From: Gekko japonicus
Taxonomy: Eukaryota
Length of the DNA stretch: 64,000 bases
NCBI RefSeq assembly: GCF_001447785.1
Contig: NW_015167630.1
Location: 82,560 to 146,559, forward strand
Direction: 5' to 3'
Shown: positions 4,506-56,200 of the stretch, piece after piece
Layout of the letters: each line of letters opens with the position of its first letter
How positions within the stretch are numbered: the stretch's first letter is position 1
Notes under the pieces: model-generated
The model's database searches: none
Seen by the model: only the letters and a program-made list of their open reading frames with translations
Told to the model about the DNA's origin: nothing
Position numbers and translations under genes: made by a program

Positions 4506-6553
4506 GTGTCTGTCTTGAACATGGAACTATACTTTATTTTAACTGTGGTTGGTTTGTGAAACCAGGATTTAACCCAAACAAATCTTGGCTTGTCCCAACA
4601 AATGTAGGTTTTATTGGCTTCTCCTGCCCTTCCATGAAAAGACCCAGCTGGTATCCCAGTTGGCACTCTGGTGAGGACAGCACCAGGGAACAAGTCAGGA
4701 TTAAACCATGTGTGCACTTCCTTAATACTTGTTCGTATGTCACACAAAACCACAGGTAAGATTAACTGTGGTGATTCAATGAACTTCAAACCATATTTTC
4801 AAATCCTGGTTTGACATATCCTAGCTAACCAAAGTTAGTGGAAGGGCCTGCATTCAGATTACTGCACTGGTCATTAAACCGTGGTTTAGTGTGTCATCCA
4901 AACTAAGATTACACATTTAGTTAAAACTATGAAAATAACCATAATATTGATAATATGACTGTAGGACAGCAAGCCCCAGCTGTCATGCACCTTCCCTTGG
5001 CCTCAGACAGAGAAGAGGGGGCTGCGTACCACCCTATTCTACCTCCTGTCCTCTAGCTCTACTCACTTCTGAGCTGGGAGGCAGAGCTGGTCTGTCCTCC
5101 TTGGCCTCCCCCTCAAGCCTTTTGAAGGCCCTAGCCAGGCTTGGGGCATGCCCAGTGGCCTCCACCCAGGAGCTTTAAGGGGGTGTGGCCAAACTCATGA
5201 GGGACCAATAGTGCCTTCTGAGCAATTTCCGCCCCATTGCTCCCTTATCCAACCCCAGGATGGAGCTTCCCAACAGCTGGCCATCAAAGTTTTGGGTTGC
5301 CTGACTATTAAAGGGCCAGCTGCCATTGATCAGCTGGCTGGCGTGCAGACCTGTATGTGCATCTGTAACAGACCTGTAGCCACGGAGGGCCCTTGGGGTG
5401 ACGCCCCCTCCTGAATGTGCCCTGCCCCTCCCGGCTGCCTCCCCTGCTGGTCCCAGGAGGGAAAGGGAGTCTGGGGCGACCGCACATATCGCTGTGCCAC
5501 ACTCCAAGTTCTTGGACAGAAGCTGGTTGGTCAGGAGGGGGCAGGCCCTCCTCTCCCAATGCCCTTGCAGCTTCGTAGTTGGCTGGCCCTGGATGTGGAG
5601 CTCACTGCCAGCAGTGAGGCTGTGCACAGAAACTGGTTGGCTGGGAGGGGGCAGGCCCTCCTCCCCCACTGCCCTTGCAGCCACCAGCAGCGAGCTCCAC
5701 ATCCGGCGCCAGCCAGCCATGAGGCTACACAAAGAAAGAGAGGAAGGAGGGAGGGAGCCTGGGGTGACTGCACGCTTGCTGGCAGCTGGGCAGTGTATCT
5801 ATTTAAACTTCATGTGGCACGCTGCCCTCCTGGAGAAGTGCAGTGCTCCCTTCCTTTCTGCTCCAGCAGGCAGGTGAATGAGTCCAGCACTCCCCTCCAG
5901 AAGATTTTTGGTAGGGGTGCAATTAAACTCCCTGCTCCCGGTCTTTGCCCCCCACCGGATATTTTCTGGCTATGGGCCTGGTCTGTAACCTCACTGGGCT
6001 AGGTGGATACCAGTCTTGACCACATGGGGTCTGAGAAGGAGGGGAACCTAGTGTTCTTCCCCGAAAATAGCGAAACTAATAAATGTGGTCTACTTTACAA
6101 GCATTGATATAAAGATCACTATTACATGAAAAATGCTTTCATTAGCTTAAAGCACAATATAAATGCAAACAATTACAGAGCTGCAGTGAAAATAAATATC
6201 CCTCCCTAAGTGGTCTCATATAATTCAGCTACTTCCTTTTCAAAAAACATCCCTGTAAGATTAAAAAAACCCTCTAGATTAAAACCTATCGTACTTACGA
6301 ATTTTTCATGTCTTAAATTCTAGTCCATATAAACAGTAAGCAGAGCCTTATATACTGTGCTCAGCCCTCTTCCTTTGACGGTTAGACTTAATGCTGATGC
6401 AGGGTCAGTGGTACATCAATCATTAATAAAATACATGCTTTTAAATTCTAAGCTTCTAATTCTGATATCCAACTTCTTACAAAGTTTGTTTTAAATTGTG
6501 GAGTACAACCTTGGGCATGTTTACCTAGAAGTCAAACTAGCAAAATAAACCTA

Positions 6554-48245: not shown

Positions 48246-50466
48246 TACCTGTTGTTGTTGTTTTTCTTTACAAGATACCTTATTCATTGAAAGTGATGTC
48301 AACCCATATTTCTTTTATAGTGCAAACTCTTTAAAGGCTTTACAATAATTTTCTTAGAAAACAGTTGTTCAGAGCTTATTAACCAAGCTTTATCCTTTTG
48401 GTGAAGTTAACCAACTTATATTACTAATTTATAGAATCCAAGCCTTTGTATATGTCTTTTTTACCCAGTCAGGCTGATATCCTTTGTTTGCAGTCTTGGA
48501 AACCTATTGTTTATTTTTTTTACTCAGGGGTACTATAAAAGCATTTAAGCTCACTAAGGAAGGTAATTTACTTATTCTATGAAACTCAAAATTAACAATT
48601 GTTACCTTATCATGCTTTATATAGAAGAGGTTATATCACATTAGAATTTGAATCATTACATTGTTCATCATAGAGAAACTGTTTATTTCAACTAACAAGG
48701 GATGGGAGGGTGGGAGGAGGGTTTTTCCCTATTGCCCCCCTACATTATCTCAATTTTTCATTCTGTTTGTGTAATAATACATTTTTATAAGCTTTACCCT
48801 ATTAAATATAGGGTAAGCTACAATTAGATACCCTCTTAGGAGGAAGATATCCCCCCTTCTTACAATTTGGAAGAAGAGGGCATATACAGTTGATGCCATG
48901 CAACCAATAGGGTTGTCACGGCTTAGTTTTTGTTATTGTAGTTTATGTACTAGTTTTGATCCCTTGCTTATCTTGTTGTCCATATACGTCTTCTCCTGCC
49001 ATGAACGTTCATCCAAGATACAGTACACACTTGTGTTTTTCTTGATACCAAATGGATAATACCCTAAAAATAATCTCTTTAAATTGTAGGGGCTTAAATA
49101 GCAAATGCAAGTCTAGAAAAATTTCTAATGCCTTGGTGAAAATACGGCCTGATATTCTTCTCTTACAAGAGACTCACTTAAGACGTTCATCTCAACCTAT
49201 TTTTAAAAACAAATGGTTCGCTTACCAATACCAAGCGCATGGCTCCTCCTCATCTCGAGGAGTAGCCATTTTATTTTCTAAAAACACGTTCAATTTGATT
49301 GCCATGACCAACTTATAGATGTTAAGGGACGTTTTTTATTTTTAAAAGGTCTGCTGAATAACACCTTGATGACAATTGGATCTATATATGCTCCCAATGT
49401 AGGACAAGAAATTTGTTTACGTGAAACCTTTGTATCTCTTGGAAATTTCCAAGCACGACACATTATGTTGGGTGATTTTAACACAATCCCAAATTATTTT
49501 TTGGGACAGATCCTATAACCCCTCACTCCCGAAAAAATATAACGCGAATTCCAAATTTACATCGCCTTTTCAGTTAATTTTAGACCAACAGGGGCTATGT
49601 GATGTGTGGAGAATCCACCATCCCGGTATGAAAGATTACACCTATTTTTCCCCCCGACATCAGGTATATACGAGAATAGACGCTATTTTAGTTTCCTCGG
49701 CATTAATTAACCAAATACAATCCTCTGAAATTGGACTGCGCACCCTATCCGATCACGCCTGGACGGAATGTTCCCTCGACCTACAACCAAACGAACCACA
49801 CACCAGATCTTGGTCCTTAAATAAAAATATTTTATTCAGTCAAAGTGCTTGCGAGAACATAGAAAAATCTTTAGAAGAATTTTTCAAATTTAACAAATCC
49901 GATGAAGTCCCATTGCCAGTGATTTGGGACGCTAAAAAAGCCTTTATAAGGGGGAAATTCATCGCAGTCACAGCAGCTTACAATAAACAAAGAAATAAAA
50001 TAAGACAAACAATCTTAAACAACATCAAACTTTATGAAGATAAACATAAAAAACGGGTTCAAAACGCATTTATAAGCTCCTCCTTTTAGAACGTAAAAAA
50101 TTAGAATCACTTGAAACTTCGCAGGTGCAAAAACAATTATTATACTTGAAACATAAGTATTGGTTTAAACACCCTCGTTCCCTAAAACTTTTAGCTTCGA
50201 AAATTAAACAGCAACAATTACTTCGAAACACAAACTCATTAAGGGACTCCCAAGGGAAAATAATTACTTCCACTAAGGATATCCTTAATACCTTTCAACG
50301 TTACTTCCAACAATTATATAGCACCGATAACCCTTCTCCCACTCTTATTACCAAATTTTTAGAAACCAAAGACGTTATTAAAAAATTATCTCTTTACCAT
50401 AGTAAAAAGATGGAAGCCCCATTCACTCAACAGGAGTTATTATCTGCCATTAAACGCACAAAATCC

Positions 50467-51856
50467 GGAGTTTCCGGTGGCTGTGAGATTGCGCAGTCAG
50501 ACCGAGAGAGCCTCCGCGTCCTAGCTCCAAAGAATGCAAAATAAAGACTAATTGAGGACCATAAAGATAAAAACAACTTGCTGATAAGAATGGGGAAGCA
50601 AAGAGGAGGAAAAGGAGGGAAAGCAGCCAAGAAAAATAACGAGGGAGCTCAACAAACTGAGCAAACTATGCAACCATCGGATGATGACGCCCCCCCCCCA
50701 TTTGAACTCAACTCCGAAGAAGAGGCACCTAGCCGGCAGAGTAAAAGGAAACGTGAGGATTCAATTACCAAAAAAGATATACAGACTATGCTGGTAGAAA
50801 TGAAAAAAGAAATTAAAGACAGCATCACCCCTATCTATCAGAAACTGGACGCTATGAATCTCAGCCTAACAGATCTGCGGCAAAGAACTGATCAGGCACT
50901 GACGCAAACAGCTAAAAATAAGCAGGATATACAAAGCCTGAAGACCTTTGAGANNNNNNNNNNNNNNNNNNNNNNNNNNNNNNNNNNNNNNNNNNNNNNN
51001 NNNNNNNNNNNNNNNNNNNNNNNNNNNNNNNNNNNNNNNNNNNNNNNNNNNNNNNNNNNNNNNNNNNNNNNNNNNNNNNNNNNNNNNNNNNNNNNNNNNN
51101 NNNNNNNNNNNNNNNNNNNNNNNNNNNNNNNNNNNNNNNNNNNNNNNNNNNNNNNNNNNNNNNNNNNNNNNNNNNNNNNNNNNNNNNNNNNNNNNNNNNN
51201 NNNNNNNNNNNNNNNNNNNNNNNNNNNNNNNNNNNNNNNNNNNNNNNNNNNNNNNNNNNNNNNNNNNNNNNNNNNNNNNNNNNNNNNNNNNNNNNNNNNN
51301 NNNNNNNNNNNNNNNNNNNNNNNNNNNNNNNNNNNNNNNNNNNNNNNNNNNNNNNNNNNNNNNNNNNNNNNNNNNNNNNNNNNNNNNNNNNNNNNNNNNN
51401 NNNNNNNNNNNNNNNNNNNNNNNNNNNNNNNNNNNNNNNNNNNNNNNNNNNNNNNNNNNNNNNNNNNNNNNNNNNNNNNNNNNNNNNNNNNNNNNNNNNN
51501 NNNNNNNNNNNNNNNNNNNNNNNNNNNNNNNNNNNNNNNNNNNNNNNNNNNNNNNNNNNNNNNNNNNNNNNNNNNNNNNNNNNNNNNNNNNNNNNNNNNN
51601 NNNNNNNNNNNNNNNNNNNNNNNNNNNNNNNNNNNNNNNNNNNNNNNNNNNNNNNNNNNNNNNNNNNNNNNNNNNNNNNNNNNNNNNNNNNNNNNNNNNN
51701 NNNNNNNNNNNNNNNNNNNNNNNNNNNNNNNNNNNNNNNNNNNNNNNNNNNNNNNNNNNNNNNNNNNNNNNNNNNNNNNNNNNNNNNNNNNNNNNNNNNN
51801 NNNNNNNNNNNNNNNNNNNNNNNNNNNNNNNNNNNNNNNNNNNNNNATATAAACAT
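50467..51856 (+). mobile_element. Second L1-like element nested in host ORF2 (5' UTR and ORF1 start; remainder in an assembly gap)
   Basis: AAAATCC duplicated at 50460-50466 and 51857-51863; ORF MGKQRGGKGGK...DIQTMLVEMKKEIKDSI with coiled-coil character; host ORF2 rejoins as TKS|NKAPGRDG. Confidence 0.8.
50954..51846. other. Assembly gap (other gaps: 17934-18073, 25639-25826, 28593-28757, 35705-35720)
   Basis: Runs of N. Confidence 1.
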
Positions 51857-53781
51857 AAAATCCAATAAAGCACCAGGAAGGGACGGCCTCCCAATTGAAT
51901 ATTATAAAAAATTCACCTTATCACTTGCAACCCCTCTGTTAGAAATTTGTAATCATGTCCAACAAACTGGCAATATACCAGATTCCTGGACAGAAGCAAA
52001 GATCGTAGTTATTCCCAAAAAAGGGAAAGATGCCGAGATCCCTCAATCTTACCGACCTATTTCACTCCTTAATAGTGATTATAAAATTTTCACTTCTATG
52101 TTAACATCCCGTCTTAATAATTTTATCAGTCACTATATACATACGAATCAATCTGGCTTTATTCCCCAAAGAGAGCTTACTGACAACATCAGAAAAACAC
52201 TTGGTCTAATTTTTTATGCAAAACGATACTTATCAGACGTTTGTTTCTTAGCTTTGGATATAGAAAAAGCGTTTGATAAGGTAGAACCCTTATTCCTATC
52301 TAAAGTGATTAGTGCAATGGGCTTTGGCCCCAATTTTCAAAAAATTATCCACGCTTTATACAAACAGCCCAAAGCACACGTAGTTATTAACAATTCTTTT
52401 TCAGAAAATTTTTTCTTAACCCGAGGCACCCGCCAGGGGTGCCCACTTTCACCCTTTTTATTTGCCATTGCTATAGAGCCTTTGGCTAATATAATAAGAA
52501 ATTCTGATAATATACCAGGTATTAATATATCCCATCACTCTCATAAAATAAGTTTATTTGCCGACGATTTTGTTTTATATGTTAGTCAACCTCACATTGC
52601 TTTACCAATGATAGAAACCCACTTACTTAATTTTGCAACCCTCTCCGGACTTCATGTTAATCAAGCCAAAACCATTTTATACCCAGTAAATTTATCCCAC
52701 CCTATGAAGAACTTTATTCAAGAAAACTTTCACTACCAATGGGTTTCACAATATTGGCTATATCTTGGAGTCAAAATTCCCTTAAACTTAGATACGTTAT
52801 ATAAAATTAACTATACTGAATTATCTAACAATACCAATAACATTTTATCTCAATGGCAAGAAAAGAACCTTTCCTGGATGGAAAAAATCTTAATACTTAA
52901 AACATTTATATTTACCAAATTTCTTTACCTCTTTAGAGCCCTTCCTCTCCTGATACCACCATCGCAATTCACCCTTTGGCAAACACAATGGACAAAATAC
53001 ATTTGGAATCACCGACACCCCCGGGTTAAATACACCACTCTATGCCGCTTTTCATCTTTAGGTGGGTTAGCCTTACCTAATTTAAAATCATACTACGAAG
53101 CAACGATCCTCAAAATGGTGCTAAAAATTTTAAAAGCAGACCCCCAACCCGAATGGATAGGAATTGAAGAATTCTTTTTGCAACAATCCTCGTATATAAT
53201 GACCCTTTGGCAAAAAACCACAGAGAAAACTTATAATATTCAACAACACCCCTTTATGCTTTCTCTTTTTAAAATCTGGAACATAAAGCGGTGCATCCTT
53301 CTACCTGAATTATCGCTCATGTCTTCATTTTACGGTCAAACCTGGTTTCCTCTGGCATTCCCTCAAAATACCTTTTTAAAATGGAAAAAAGCAAAATTAA
53401 CTACACTCCATGATCTTACACGTAGGCAACACCTCTTAGAAAAAACCAAACTAGACACTAAAGCCCAGACGTCTTTACCATGGTTGGAATATCTCCAAAT
53501 CCGACACCTTTTCGCTACACCAAAATTACAAAAGGCATGCGTGACCCCGTATACAAATTTTGAGAAGCTCTTGGTTGCTACCGATGGTTCCTCCAAAAGT
53601 CTAATCTCTTCTATTTATAAAATTCTGTTGGACCCAAAACCCCATAAGCTTCCTACATACACAAATTCATGGTCAAAGGATCTTAGCACAAAGTTCGACG
53701 AACCCTTTTGGGAATCTGTATGGTCCTCATATGCCTTTAAGACCAAATCAATTAATGTGTTCCAACAGAATTATAAGATTA

Positions 53782-54694
53782 CTAGGGAGCAAGGCCCGTT
53801 GCGAAGGGCTATACAACGGGCGGCTAGCCCCCCCTCCTCGCGCCCTGCCCCTCTCGGCCGTGACCGAGGTGGCAGCCGCTGTTAGCCTTCGCACGGCGCT
53901 GCCCCCCCGCAAAATTAGTTATACTGTTACTGTTTCCAGTTAACTTCACTGACAAGCACAAGAGGACATCATAAATGGATTATAGGTAAACTAGGGAGCA
54001 AGGCCCGTTGCGAAGGGCTATACAACGGGCGGCTAGCCCCCCCTCCTCGCGCCCTGCCCCTCTCGGCTGTGACTGAGGTGGCAGCCAGTGTTAGCCTTCG
54101 CCCAGCGCTGCCCCCCCCCTGTCCTGACCCAGTTGGCTGCCGGGCTTAGGCTGCTGTCCGCCGTGCCGAGCCACTCGCGGCTCTCCTCCGCTCGGCTGCA
54201 GCCCCCCTCCCTCTCTGCGCACCGACCCAGGCGGCTGGCGGCCTTAGCATGCTGCCCGTCGTCCCCAGCCACTCGGACCTGTCGGGTCTCCTCCGGCCGG
54301 CTCTCGGCCCCTTCCCCTGTCTGGCCCGACCCTGGCGGCTGCCGGTCGACTCGCGCCTCCCCTCCGCCCGGCTCTCGCCCCCTTCCCCTCTCGGGCTCGA
54401 TCCAGGCGGCTGCGGTTCGACTCGCACCTCTCCTCTGCTCAGCTCTCGCCCCCTCTCCTCACCGACCCAGGCGGCTGCAGGTGTGAGCCTGCGGCTCGTC
54501 GTCCCCAGGCACTGGCGCGTCTCGGCTCTCCTCCGAATCCTCCGCAGGCCACGGGAAGCTGCGTGCACGGCGGGACTCAAACGACGTGGCCAATGGGATG
54601 TGGCCAAGCTGTTGACAGGCAGGCGAGCCGCCCAAACACTGTAGGGGCGCATTGCGTGCAGTTTGCGTCTTACTGCTTTATAATATAGGGAGGA
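53782..54694 (-). mobile_element. Non-autonomous Helitron with duplicated 3' terminus
   Basis: Minus strand 5'-TCCTCCCTATATTATAAA...CTAG-3'; inserted between A and T with no TSD; subterminal hairpin gcccgttg / caacgggc; removal restores ORF2 NYKIITRWYLTP. Confidence 0.93.
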
Positions 54695-56200
54695 TTACGA
54701 GGTGGTACCTTACCCCTTTAAAACTGCACAAAATTAACTCCTTCCCCCCTTTGTTGGAGAGGTTGCGGAAATGTTGGATCTTACATCCACTGTTGGTGGG
54801 AATGTCCGGTGGTAAAATCCTTTTGGCAAAGGGTACTATTGGAAATTGAGAATCTTACAGGATACAAAGTCCCTATGAAACCCGAGATTTTAATCCTAAA
54901 TAATTGGAAAGAGTTAAATATTCCCCAATATGGTAAGGAATTACTTACGATGTTATCGTCAGCGGCTAAAACTACAATTGCCCAACAATGGAAAGACACT
55001 CATACATTAAGTTTAAGTTCTTGGTTTTCTAACATTTGGAACCATTTATTGATGGATAGAATTTCAGACAAACTATCTTGTTTTGAATCCTCTAAACAAA
55101 TAGATACCTTCTACGGTAGATGGCATTCAATTTTGGATCACTTGGAATATATATTAGGACAACTTCCAAACTCGCAACAATCACAATATTTTTCTTTTAT
55201 TCGTAAACATTGGATACTGTAAAGGTACCTATCTATTGCCACTTTAACTTTGGATTTATAGAAGTGTTACTTACCTTGTTTTTAGAAAGAAAGTACAACT
55301 TCGGGATCAACATTAATTATTGTTTTGTTTGTTAGTGTTACTGCGTGTATTGTCACTGTTAATATGTTATTATAATGTTGATTGTGTTTACTTTTGAAAA
55401 TAATAAAATATTTTATTTTAAAAAAAATCTTGGGACTTCAGCAACAGCTCGGGGTCTCTAGGAATCTATAATCAGTCATTAAACATGTTTTGCTACAGCT
55501 GAAATCACATCAAGTGATGTCCTGTCCCTTTACTAAAGGGGAAATAGCCCTAACTTGTTCCTCATCCTCTGATGTGGCAGACCCAACTGCCGCCCAGAGA
55601 GTCCTCCTCTCCCCAGTACAATGCTGAGTCCCAAGACAACGGGCAGCATCTAGCCCAGCATCTACCTGCACCACAATGTGTGTTTCCTGTATGCGCAGAG
55701 ATAAGGGTGCCAGCTGTCTGGTTACTGGTTCTAGGATCCATGCCTACTTGGCCTCAGAGTCTTTGGGCCTTTCCTCTGATAGAAAGGGATCCAGGTCCAT
55801 GATAGCCAGGAACAGATATGCTTCCTCAAAGACAAACTGAAGAAGCAGAGGTGAAGAGCAATGGCCAGAATGTCCGACTGACAGGAAAACATTTAAGTTG
55901 ATGGGTGGTATGCATCAAAGCCCAACAATCCTTTCACTTACAAGTGGAAGTATGAGCAGCATTTCTTTTTTTTTAATTAAGATTTTTATTGTTGTCACAC
56001 AAAGAAGTCGACATAGCAAACAAGCCCCGTATATCCCATCCCCTCCCTCTTTCCTAATGTGTCCTTTTAGCAGAGAAGGAAAGAGAGAGCGAAAAAGAAA
56101 GTAAGGCAGGAGAGCCAGGTTAACAAAGCAAGGTGCAACATTATGGATTCAATTAAACAGGGAATAAAGGTGAGGAGATATCATTGCTCAAATAGGTACA

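What the first reader, a model, noticed from the sequence alone, without database searches (positions are those of the whole stretch)
53782..54119. Helitron has two 3' termini separated by ~80 bp of unrelated DNA: probable end-bypass capture
Seen: the ~128-bp terminal unit (CTAG plus hairpin) occurs at 53782-53910 and 53991-54119 and differs at about 6 positions. The AT-rich spacer 53911-53990 matches neither the Helitron body nor the host ORF2 frame, and the inner CTAG is followed by T on the minus strand like a former insertion site. Inference: rolling-circle replication read through the inner terminator, picked up donor-locus flank, and stopped at a second family member's terminus. This would be a compact record of Helitron 3' transduction in a squamate.
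Basis: partly seen in the sequence, partly recalled or inferred. Interest (0 to 1): 0.78.

Follow-up and report, generated by a model that had tools for sequence, protein, structure and literature searches.

The report
Lizard Helitron with two 3' ends
A small non-coding rolling-circle transposon (Helitron) sitting inside an old L1 element carries its 3' end twice with 80 bases of unique DNA in between, most likely a one-off record of the already well-known way Helitrons overrun their stop signal and pick up neighbouring DNA.

Summary
On the minus strand a 913-nt non-autonomous Helitron (53782-54694; 5'-TC, 3'-CTAG, subterminal hairpin, A|T target) interrupts an L1 ORF2. Its terminal ~127 nt occur twice (53782-53908 and 53991-54117, 6 mismatches), separated by an AT-rich 80-nt spacer found nowhere else in the window.

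Raw reads of three other individuals (about 1x each) put the spacer at about single-copy depth (0-2 reads per run). The termini get 29-47. So the spacer is not part of the family consensus, and the double-ended form has not amplified. Reads from other copies break off at both CTAGs, and 7 reads join the terminal unit straight to the body, so the family norm is single-ended.

The six differences are clustered. At five of them the family majority carries the outer unit's letter, which points to two source copies rather than a self-duplication.

End bypass with termination at a second family terminus is the best reading (about 0.55). It is not proven: I could not search for the donor locus, and an in-situ adjacent insertion or a repair duplication remains possible. 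No read confirms the inner unit's private letters.

The phenomenon is well documented in maize, bats, fungi and the Helraiser experiments. The scan had already noted this Helitron (s1-824290), but no double-ended copy elsewhere. Interest is low.

The parts
53782..54694 (-). Whole composite non-autonomous Helitron (913 nt): 5'-TC ... CTAG-3', inserted between host A (54695 on the minus strand) and host T (53781 on the minus strand)
   Evidence: Sequence read. No Pfam family in its three ORFs. Many reads at 85-99% likeness cover its termini and body.
54675..54694 (-). 5' terminus (minus strand starts TCCTCCCTATATTATAAAGC), preceded by host A
54120..54674 (-). GC-rich body (69% GC, CpG o/e 0.83) made largely of degenerate GC-rich repeats
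   Evidence: Read depth 13-35 per run.
54290..54454 (.). 71-nt tandem array, 2.3 copies, 85% matches, inside the body
   Evidence: family D3.
53991..54119 (-). Inner 3' terminal unit, contiguous with the body; ends in CTAG (53991-53994); carries 5 letters not seen in any laid read
54003..54030 (-). Inner subterminal hairpin (9-bp stem including one G-T pair, 10-nt loop), 12 nt from the 3' end
   Evidence: -10 kcal/mol for the 49-nt end; z -1.66.
53911..53990 (-). 80-nt AT-rich spacer (31% GC, no CpG), unique in the window and about single copy in reads; begins with T after the inner CTAG
53782..53910 (-). Outer 3' terminal unit, a 5'-truncated copy of the family end; ends in CTAG (53782-53785) next to host T; matches the family majority at 5 of the 6 sites where the units differ
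53794..53821 (-). Outer subterminal hairpin, identical to the inner one
52098..53781 (+). Host L1 ORF2 (reverse transcriptase and downstream part), left of the insertion
   Evidence: Human L1 ORF2p structure 8sxt, E 2.6e-62; Pfam RVT_1, E 3e-27.
54695..55222 (+). Host L1 ORF2 C-terminal part, right of the insertion. The frame is restored at the junction (..NYKI | I | TRWYLTP..) and then shifts by one in a C-run about 50 nt further on
   Evidence: 8sxt residues 1130-1264, E 4e-14.

Best explanation
A standard single-ended member of a lizard non-autonomous Helitron family (body plus the inner terminus) once lay at another locus. About 80 nt downstream of it, in the same orientation, lay the last ~129 nt of a second family member. 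That second piece was either a 5'-truncated copy or the tail of a Helitron into which the first had inserted. In one round of rolling-circle transposition the transposase started at the 5'-TC and failed to terminate at the first hairpin-CTAG. It ran on through the 80 nt of flank and terminated at the second hairpin-CTAG. The composite then integrated as one piece at an A|T site in an L1 ORF2.

Shown: the anatomy, the single clean target site, the single-copy status of the spacer, the single-ended family norm, and the non-random pattern of differences between the two units.

Inferred: the read-through itself, the donor arrangement and the order of events.
For: (1) Canonical Helitron features at the outer borders: 5'-TC after host A, CTAG before host T, and a hairpin 12 nt from the end.

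(2) One insertion event. The left L1 piece aligns to human ORF2p up to residue 1082 and has 26 more residues. The right piece aligns from residue 1130 and has 19 residues before that, plus the split codon. That gives 46 lizard against 47 human residues between the anchors, so no L1 sequence is missing and none lies inside the block.

(3) The inner CTAG is followed by T and a TA-rich stretch. This stretch resembles the outer flank (9 of 14) and the AT-rich, heterogeneous flanks of other copies (loose-end consensuses, agreement 0.50-0.64), as a former insertion junction would.

(4) Spacer depth is 0-2 reads per run (X9 about 0.6, X10 0, X12 2), against 29-47 on the terminal 27-nt bin. So the spacer is unique DNA, not family sequence.

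(5) 7 reads in 3 of 3 raw-read runs join 53903 to 54111, which shows that the usual family copy has the unit directly after the body.

(6) The six differences lie within 37 of 127 positions (P about 0.007 if scattered). At 54068, 54074, 54087, 54102 and 54104 every laid read carries the outer unit's letter (for example 11 of 11 reads at 54102). This fits two different source copies better than one copy duplicated and then decaying.

(7) The mechanism is established. Passages read in PMC4778049 report read-through of an intact terminator in at least 11.7% of Helraiser events. Passages read in PMC4224331 give the model in which a second Helitron terminates the read-through (Tempel et al. 2007, as cited there) and the natural case HelibatN539. 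Passages read in PMC3288121 propose a nested origin for multi-terminus Helitrons.
Against: The donor locus was not found and could not be sought. The spacer is absent from the rest of the 64-kb window, and no tool here searches a lizard genome.

The model needs a truncated or nested second terminus only 80 nt downstream in the same orientation.

No second copy of the composite is evident, since spacer depth fits one locus. With about 3 reads in all, one and two copies cannot be told apart.

The inner terminator looks fully intact, whereas in maize 99 of 100 bypassed inner ends had lost CTAG (PMC3288121).

No laid read or X1 contig carries the inner unit's private letters (0 of 11 reads at 54102). 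About 3 were expected, so the six differences rest on the assembly alone.
Confidence: 0.55

Rival explanations
1. Two insertions at this very site. A 209-nt 5'-truncated Helitron fragment (spacer plus outer unit) landed in the L1 first. A standard family member later inserted exactly at its 5' border, between host A and the fragment's first T. Nothing was transduced.
For: The inner junction obeys the A|T rule just as well: host A at 54695, T at 53990 on the minus strand. [quoted passage not shown]
Against: It needs a second hit at exactly the same dinucleotide. The spacer would then be the internal sequence of some Helitron subfamily, yet it is at about single-copy depth in three individuals. 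The supposedly younger inner unit is the one further from the family majority.
Confidence: 0.15
2. A single-ended Helitron inserted here. During integration or later, a break at its 3' end was repaired by re-copying the last ~129 nt, with 80 nt of filler DNA in between (a template switch at the G-run).
For: The outer unit's 5' border lies in a homopolymer G-run, a plausible switch point. Filler-DNA capture is an accepted Helitron model (passages read in PMC6544945).
Against: The inner copy is complete to its very last base and is followed by T and a typical TA-rich flank, which a random break would rarely give. After a self-duplication, differences should fall on both copies and be scattered. 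Here 5 of 6 are private to the inner copy and all lie within 37 nt.
Confidence: 0.12
3. Assembly artefact: the duplication, or at least the diverged stretch of the inner unit, is not present in the animal.
For: No laid read or X1 contig shows the inner unit's private letters (0 of 11 reads at 54102; the only X1 contig over 54068-54087 is a diverged paralogue). Seven reads join 53903 directly to 54111, and they could in principle be a single-ended allele of this locus.
Against: An artefactual duplication would not create 80 nt of unique sequence. The spacer is read in 2 of 3 independent raw-read runs at the depth expected for single-copy DNA, and at least one X1 contig covers it. The joint reads are expected anyway from the dozens of paralogous copies. 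Missing about 3 expected reads has a chance of roughly 5%.
Confidence: 0.06
4. The double end is the normal structure of a subfamily, so the event is old and this is just one of many copies.
For: Multi-terminus forms can amplify: 28.7% of maize helA elements have several termini (PMC3288121).
Against: Spacer depth is 0-2 reads per run against 29-47 on the termini, and the dominant read structure is single-ended. Nothing else in the window matches the spacer.
Confidence: 0.04

Closest known systems
End-bypass (read-through) chimeric Helitrons terminated by a second Helitron: Feschotte & Wessler 2001 and Tempel et al. 2007, as cited in PMC4224331; natural example HelibatN539 in bats
   Same: One 5' end, an internal family 3' end, intervening non-family DNA and a second family 3' end, all moved as one unit to a new A|T site.
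   Different: For HelibatN539 the parental locus with flanking Helitrons was identified, and the captured DNA is a gene fragment (KCNQ5). Here the capture is 80 nt of anonymous AT-rich DNA, the donor is unknown, the second terminus is only a 129-nt piece, and the composite shows no sign of amplification. Supplementary fig. S2 of that paper could not be seen.
Helraiser 3' transduction experiments (PMC4778049, passages read)
   Same: A hairpin-plus-CTAG terminator that can be overrun; flanking DNA is carried to the new site. An intact element reads through in at least 11.7% of events, so an intact inner terminator is no obstacle.
   Different: In the experiments the alternative ends were cryptic sequences without a palindrome. 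Here the alternative end is a bona fide family terminus. [quoted passage not shown] Its Supplementary Fig. 4 could not be seen.
Maize helA Helitrons with multiple 3' termini (PMC3288121, passages read)
   Same: Several family 3' ends in one element, explained by transposition from the 5' end of a nested Helitron through to the outer 3' end.
   Different: In maize 99 of 100 inner ('pseudo') termini had lost the CTAG. Here the inner CTAG and hairpin are intact and identical to the outer ones. The maize forms are common and amplified; this one is single copy.
Fusarium FoHeli elements with multiple termini (PMC5148889, passages read)
   Same: Duplicated terminal segments attributed to self-insertion followed by composite transposition.
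   Different: There it is mainly the 5' terminus that is repeated, and those elements are non-canonical.

Membership tests
Canonical Helitron (non-autonomous) | 5'-TC terminus | tested here: met
   The minus strand reads host A | TCCTCCCTATATT... at 54694.
Canonical Helitron (non-autonomous) | 3'-CTRR terminus (here CTAG) | tested here: met
   CTAG at 53782-53785 and again at 53991-53994 on the minus strand.
Canonical Helitron (non-autonomous) | 16-20-nt palindrome 10-15 nt from the 3' end (definition as worded in PMC4588551) | tested here: met
   9-bp stem with a 10-nt loop, 12 nt before the end, in both units. The energy z-score of the 49-nt end is only -1.66, so the fold alone is weak evidence.
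Canonical Helitron (non-autonomous) | Insertion between A and T without target-site duplication | tested here: met
   Host ...GATTA | element | TTACGAGG...; the L1 frame is restored and stays collinear with human ORF2p (46 vs 47 residues between anchors).
Canonical Helitron (non-autonomous) | Repeated family whose copies share termini but have different flanks | tested here: met
   Depth of 29-47 per roughly 1x run on the terminal bin. Heterogeneous loose ends start at both CTAGs (agreement 0.50-0.64).
Canonical Helitron (non-autonomous) | No RepHel coding capacity (defines non-autonomous) | tested here: met
   913 nt in all; 0 Pfam families in 3 of 3 ORFs of 131-168 aa. The autonomous partner was not sought.
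End-bypass / 3'-transduction composite Helitron | Internal family 3' terminus followed by non-family DNA and a further terminator, all inside one insertion | tested here: met
End-bypass / 3'-transduction composite Helitron | Captured DNA has a parental locus lying directly downstream of a related Helitron | not testable with these tools
   No eukaryotic genome search is on hand.
End-bypass / 3'-transduction composite Helitron | The two termini derive from two different family members (Tempel-type model) | tested here: inconclusive
   The differences are clustered (P about 0.007), and 5 of 6 are private to the inner unit while the outer unit equals the family majority. However, no read confirms the inner letters, and both units share the minority letters at 53802/54011 and 53810/54019.
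Maize-type multi-terminus Helitron with 'pseudo' inner terminus | Inner 3' terminus has lost the CTAG (99 of 100 in PMC3288121) | tested here: not met
   The inner CTAG and hairpin are intact and identical to the outer ones over the last 78 nt.

The most novel reading that the evidence does not exclude
This is a clean natural record that a vertebrate Helitron transposase overran a fully intact hairpin-CTAG terminator and then used the next family terminator 209 nt further on. That would show in a lizard that bypass is a stochastic property of the machinery and does not depend on a damaged terminator. The donor locus may still be recoverable in the genome.
Probability: 0.45. Interest if true: 0.3.

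Novelty: new member of a known kind. Interest (0 to 1): 0.2.

Why it matters
If the end-bypass reading is right, this is a tidy single-locus example in a squamate of how Helitrons pick up neighbouring DNA. It is unusual only in that the bypassed terminator is still intact. That agrees with the Helraiser finding that intact ends are overrun in roughly a tenth of events, and it contrasts with maize, where inner ends are nearly always mutated.

It opens no new question. The captured piece is 80 nt of anonymous DNA, the composite did not spread, and the mechanism is already shown experimentally. Its practical value is for repeat annotation of this genome: termini of this family can occur internally.

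Tried and rejected
**Other copies in the window.** blastn found no other copy of the element, the unit or the spacer, apart from a 32-34-nt chance-level hit near 5404.

**A paralogous empty L1 site in the window.** None was found: the left and right flanks match only themselves. I used collinearity with human ORF2p instead.

**Short L1 pieces at the junction.** Searching the 22-aa and 47-aa pieces against solved structures gave 0 hits at E<=10. The junction residues themselves are therefore not aligned to any reference, and only the spacing between anchors is.

**Spacer as a high-copy repeat.** Rejected at 85% likeness or more by depth. Older, more diverged repeats are not excluded.

**Spacer as the element's own 5' end (a rolling-circle multimer).** Rejected: the spacer has no match to the element.

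**Earlier notes of this scan.** Searches by place, sequence and words turned up no other double-ended Helitron and no transduction note. The blank by sequence means nothing.

**Literature on squamates.** The searches 'Helitron + Anolis + gene capture' (5 papers, listing only, all reviews or Repbase surveys) and 'Helitron/lizard/non-autonomous/squamate' (15 of 68 listed, listing only) showed no paper on Helitron 3' transduction in squamates. That is a statement about those two searches only.

**Not seen.** Supplementary figures of PMC4224331 and PMC4778049 that show the comparable bat cases were closed.

Full report
**What is there.**
Read on the minus strand, 54694 down to 53782 is a 913-nt element. 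It starts TCCTCCCTATATTATAAAG directly after a host A and ends ...CAACGGGCCTTGCTCCCTAG directly before a host T. A 9-bp stem with a 10-nt loop lies 12 nt before the end. Its three ORFs of 131-168 aa hit no Pfam family (0 of 3). The body is 69% GC with CpG o/e 0.83. It consists largely of degenerate GC-rich repeats, including a 71-nt array of 2.3 copies at 54290-54454. These are the defining features of a canonical non-autonomous Helitron.

**The host.**
The element interrupts an L1 ORF2.
- The 561-aa left piece matches the human L1 ORF2p structure 8sxt at E 2.6e-62 (residues 547-1082) and Pfam RVT_1 at E 3e-27.
- The right piece, from ..CWRGCGNVG.., matches 8sxt residues 1130-1264 at E 4e-14.
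- At the junction the left side ends ..QQNYKI plus one base, and the right side supplies two bases and then TRWYLTPLKLHKINSFPP.
- Between the two anchors there are 46 lizard residues against 47 human ones. So the 913 nt are one clean insertion, no L1 sequence is lost, and none of the block is L1.
- About 50 nt further on, the L1 frame shifts by one in a C-run. The L1 is a decayed copy.
- The short junction pieces alone found nothing in the structure database (0 hits).

**The observation.**
The last 127-129 nt of the element occur twice, at 53782-53910 (outer) and 53991-54119 (inner).
- There are 6 mismatches over 127 nt, E about 1e-54, and the final 78 nt are identical.
- The terminal 20-mer occurs only at these two places in 64 kb.
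- Between the units lie 80 nt with 31% GC and no CpG. They match nothing else in the window, neither the element nor the L1.
- The inner CTAG is followed by T.

One refinement: the homology stops in a G-run.

**What the reads add.**
I laid three raw-read WGS runs of the same species label from two studies (X9, X10, X12; each about 1.7-1.9 thousand million letters read) and the contigs of X1 on 53600-54400, at 85% likeness. I take about 1x coverage from a typical lizard genome size, which is an assumption.

- **Spacer depth.** In the two spacer bins (53924-53977) depth is about 0.6 in X9, 0 in X10 and 2 in X12. On the terminal bin 53789-53815 it is 38.8, 29.1 and 47.0. On the L1 flank it is 1-5. 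The spacer is therefore about single copy, not family consensus, and the double-ended form has not multiplied. With about 3 reads in all I cannot tell one genomic copy from two.
- **Loose ends.** Heterogeneous AT-rich loose ends (agreement 0.50-0.64) begin just outside both CTAGs. Before 53778-53781 there are 12 reads in X9, 13 in X10 and 25 in X12. Before 53988-53989 there are 10, 9 and 7. In other copies of the family both positions are true element ends.
- **Joints.** Seven reads (2, 2 and 3) join 53903 directly to 54111. The ordinary family member has the terminal unit directly after the body, that is, a single end.
- **Sites where the units differ.** At five of the six sites, every read laid on the inner unit carries the outer unit's letter (54068, 54074, 54087, 54102, 54104; for example 11 of 11 at 54102). 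The outer unit attracts about 18-22 reads per run over the same stretch, against 1-5 for the inner. The sixth site (53879/54088) is split about half and half in the family (29 of 55 reads).
- **Shared minority letters.** Both units share minority letters at 53802/54011 and 53810/54019.

**Reading the differences.**
Four of the six are CpG to TpG/CpA changes in the inner unit, which has 9 CpG against 14 in the outer. All six lie within 37 of 127 positions, where random scatter would do so with P about 0.007. After a self-duplication followed by neutral decay one expects changes on both copies and spread out. The pattern fits two source copies that agree in the constrained terminator and differ upstream.

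A caveat I must state as fully: no laid read and no X1 contig shows the inner unit's private letters. About three such reads were expected, so the chance of seeing none is about 5%. The six differences therefore rest on the assembly only.

**Mechanism.**
The best account is end bypass. At a donor locus a standard copy was followed, 80 nt downstream and in the same orientation, by a truncated or nested second family terminus. Transposition started at the 5'-TC, overran the first terminator, carried the 80 nt along and stopped at the second terminator. The composite then entered the L1.

The start of the spacer resembles the present 3' flank (9 of 14; only 10 of 946 comparable L1 14-mers do as well). 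It is TA-rich like the flanks of other copies, as expected for a former target site.

I put this reading at 0.55. The rivals are:
- a second insertion exactly beside a pre-existing 209-nt truncated fragment at this site (0.15);
- re-copying of the end with filler DNA during repair (0.12);
- an assembly artefact (0.06);
- a subfamily-wide structure (0.04, largely excluded by depth).

**Comparison with what is known.**
- Passages read in PMC4224331 state the model: Feschotte & Wessler 2001 proposed a missed terminator, and Tempel et al. 2007 proposed that a nearby Helitron supplies the terminator. The paper gives HelibatN539 as a case with the flanking progenitors identified.
- Passages read in PMC4778049 show that the hairpin is the terminator, and that an intact Helraiser carries flanking DNA along in at least 11.7% of events. 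[quoted passage not shown]
- Passages read in PMC3288121 report that 28.7% of maize helA elements have several termini, that 99 of 100 inner 3' ends lack an intact CTAG, and that nesting followed by transposition from the inner 5' end explains them.
- PMC5148889 (passages read) reports multiple termini in Fusarium, explained by self-insertion.

The present case works like these. It differs in having a fully intact inner terminator, a very short anonymous capture, an unknown donor and no amplification. My two literature searches on squamates (listings only) showed no such report for lizards, which says little.

**Verdict.**
The kind is well known. This is a new instance of a known kind, of low interest (0.2).

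**Tools and limits.**
- Supplements were closed.
- The one read-laying run listed only part of its rows (117 further letter differences, 65 loose ends and 286 contig pieces were not shown). So I could not inspect individual reads bridging the spacer junctions.

Noticed in passing
window 53778-53781 and 53988-53990 (flanks of other family copies, from reads): The loose-end consensuses of other copies' 3' flanks are TA-rich with recurring TTATA/TATAAT-like strings. They resemble the family's own 5' terminus (TCCTCCCTATATTATAAAG), the L1 flank and the start of the spacer. This may reflect a target preference or frequent head-to-tail neighbours. An earlier first-reader note (s1-833139) reported a 3' flank resembling the 5' terminus in other Helitrons of this genome.
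   Followed up: partly
window 54120-54694: The Helitron body is like a CpG island (69% GC, CpG o/e 0.83). Near its 5' end it has CCAAT-type motifs in both orientations (around 54590-54615). It could be a captured promoter or 5' exon fragment, or simply a GC-rich minisatellite. The upstream half of the terminal unit is itself a degenerate member of the internal GC-rich repeats (blastn 69-77%).
   Followed up: no
window 53829-53835 and 54038-54044: Many family reads break off at the C-run (a G-run on the element's strand) about 50 nt from the end (loose ends behind 53834 and 54043). Only the last ~55 nt are shared by the widest set of copies (depth 29-47, against 16-26 further in). Several subfamilies seem to share one terminator.
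   Followed up: no
window 49421-51852: Upstream of the interrupted ORF2 lie an L1 endonuclease-like ORF (49421-50089) and then an ORF1-like start (50578 onward) that runs into a masked stretch. More than one L1 copy is juxtaposed here. The window holds five N runs, which I left alone.
   Followed up: no
window 54745-54752: The host L1 ORF2 changes frame by one in a C-run about 50 nt downstream of the Helitron. 'Removal restores the frame' therefore holds only locally, and the L1 copy is dead independently of the insertion.
   Followed up: partly
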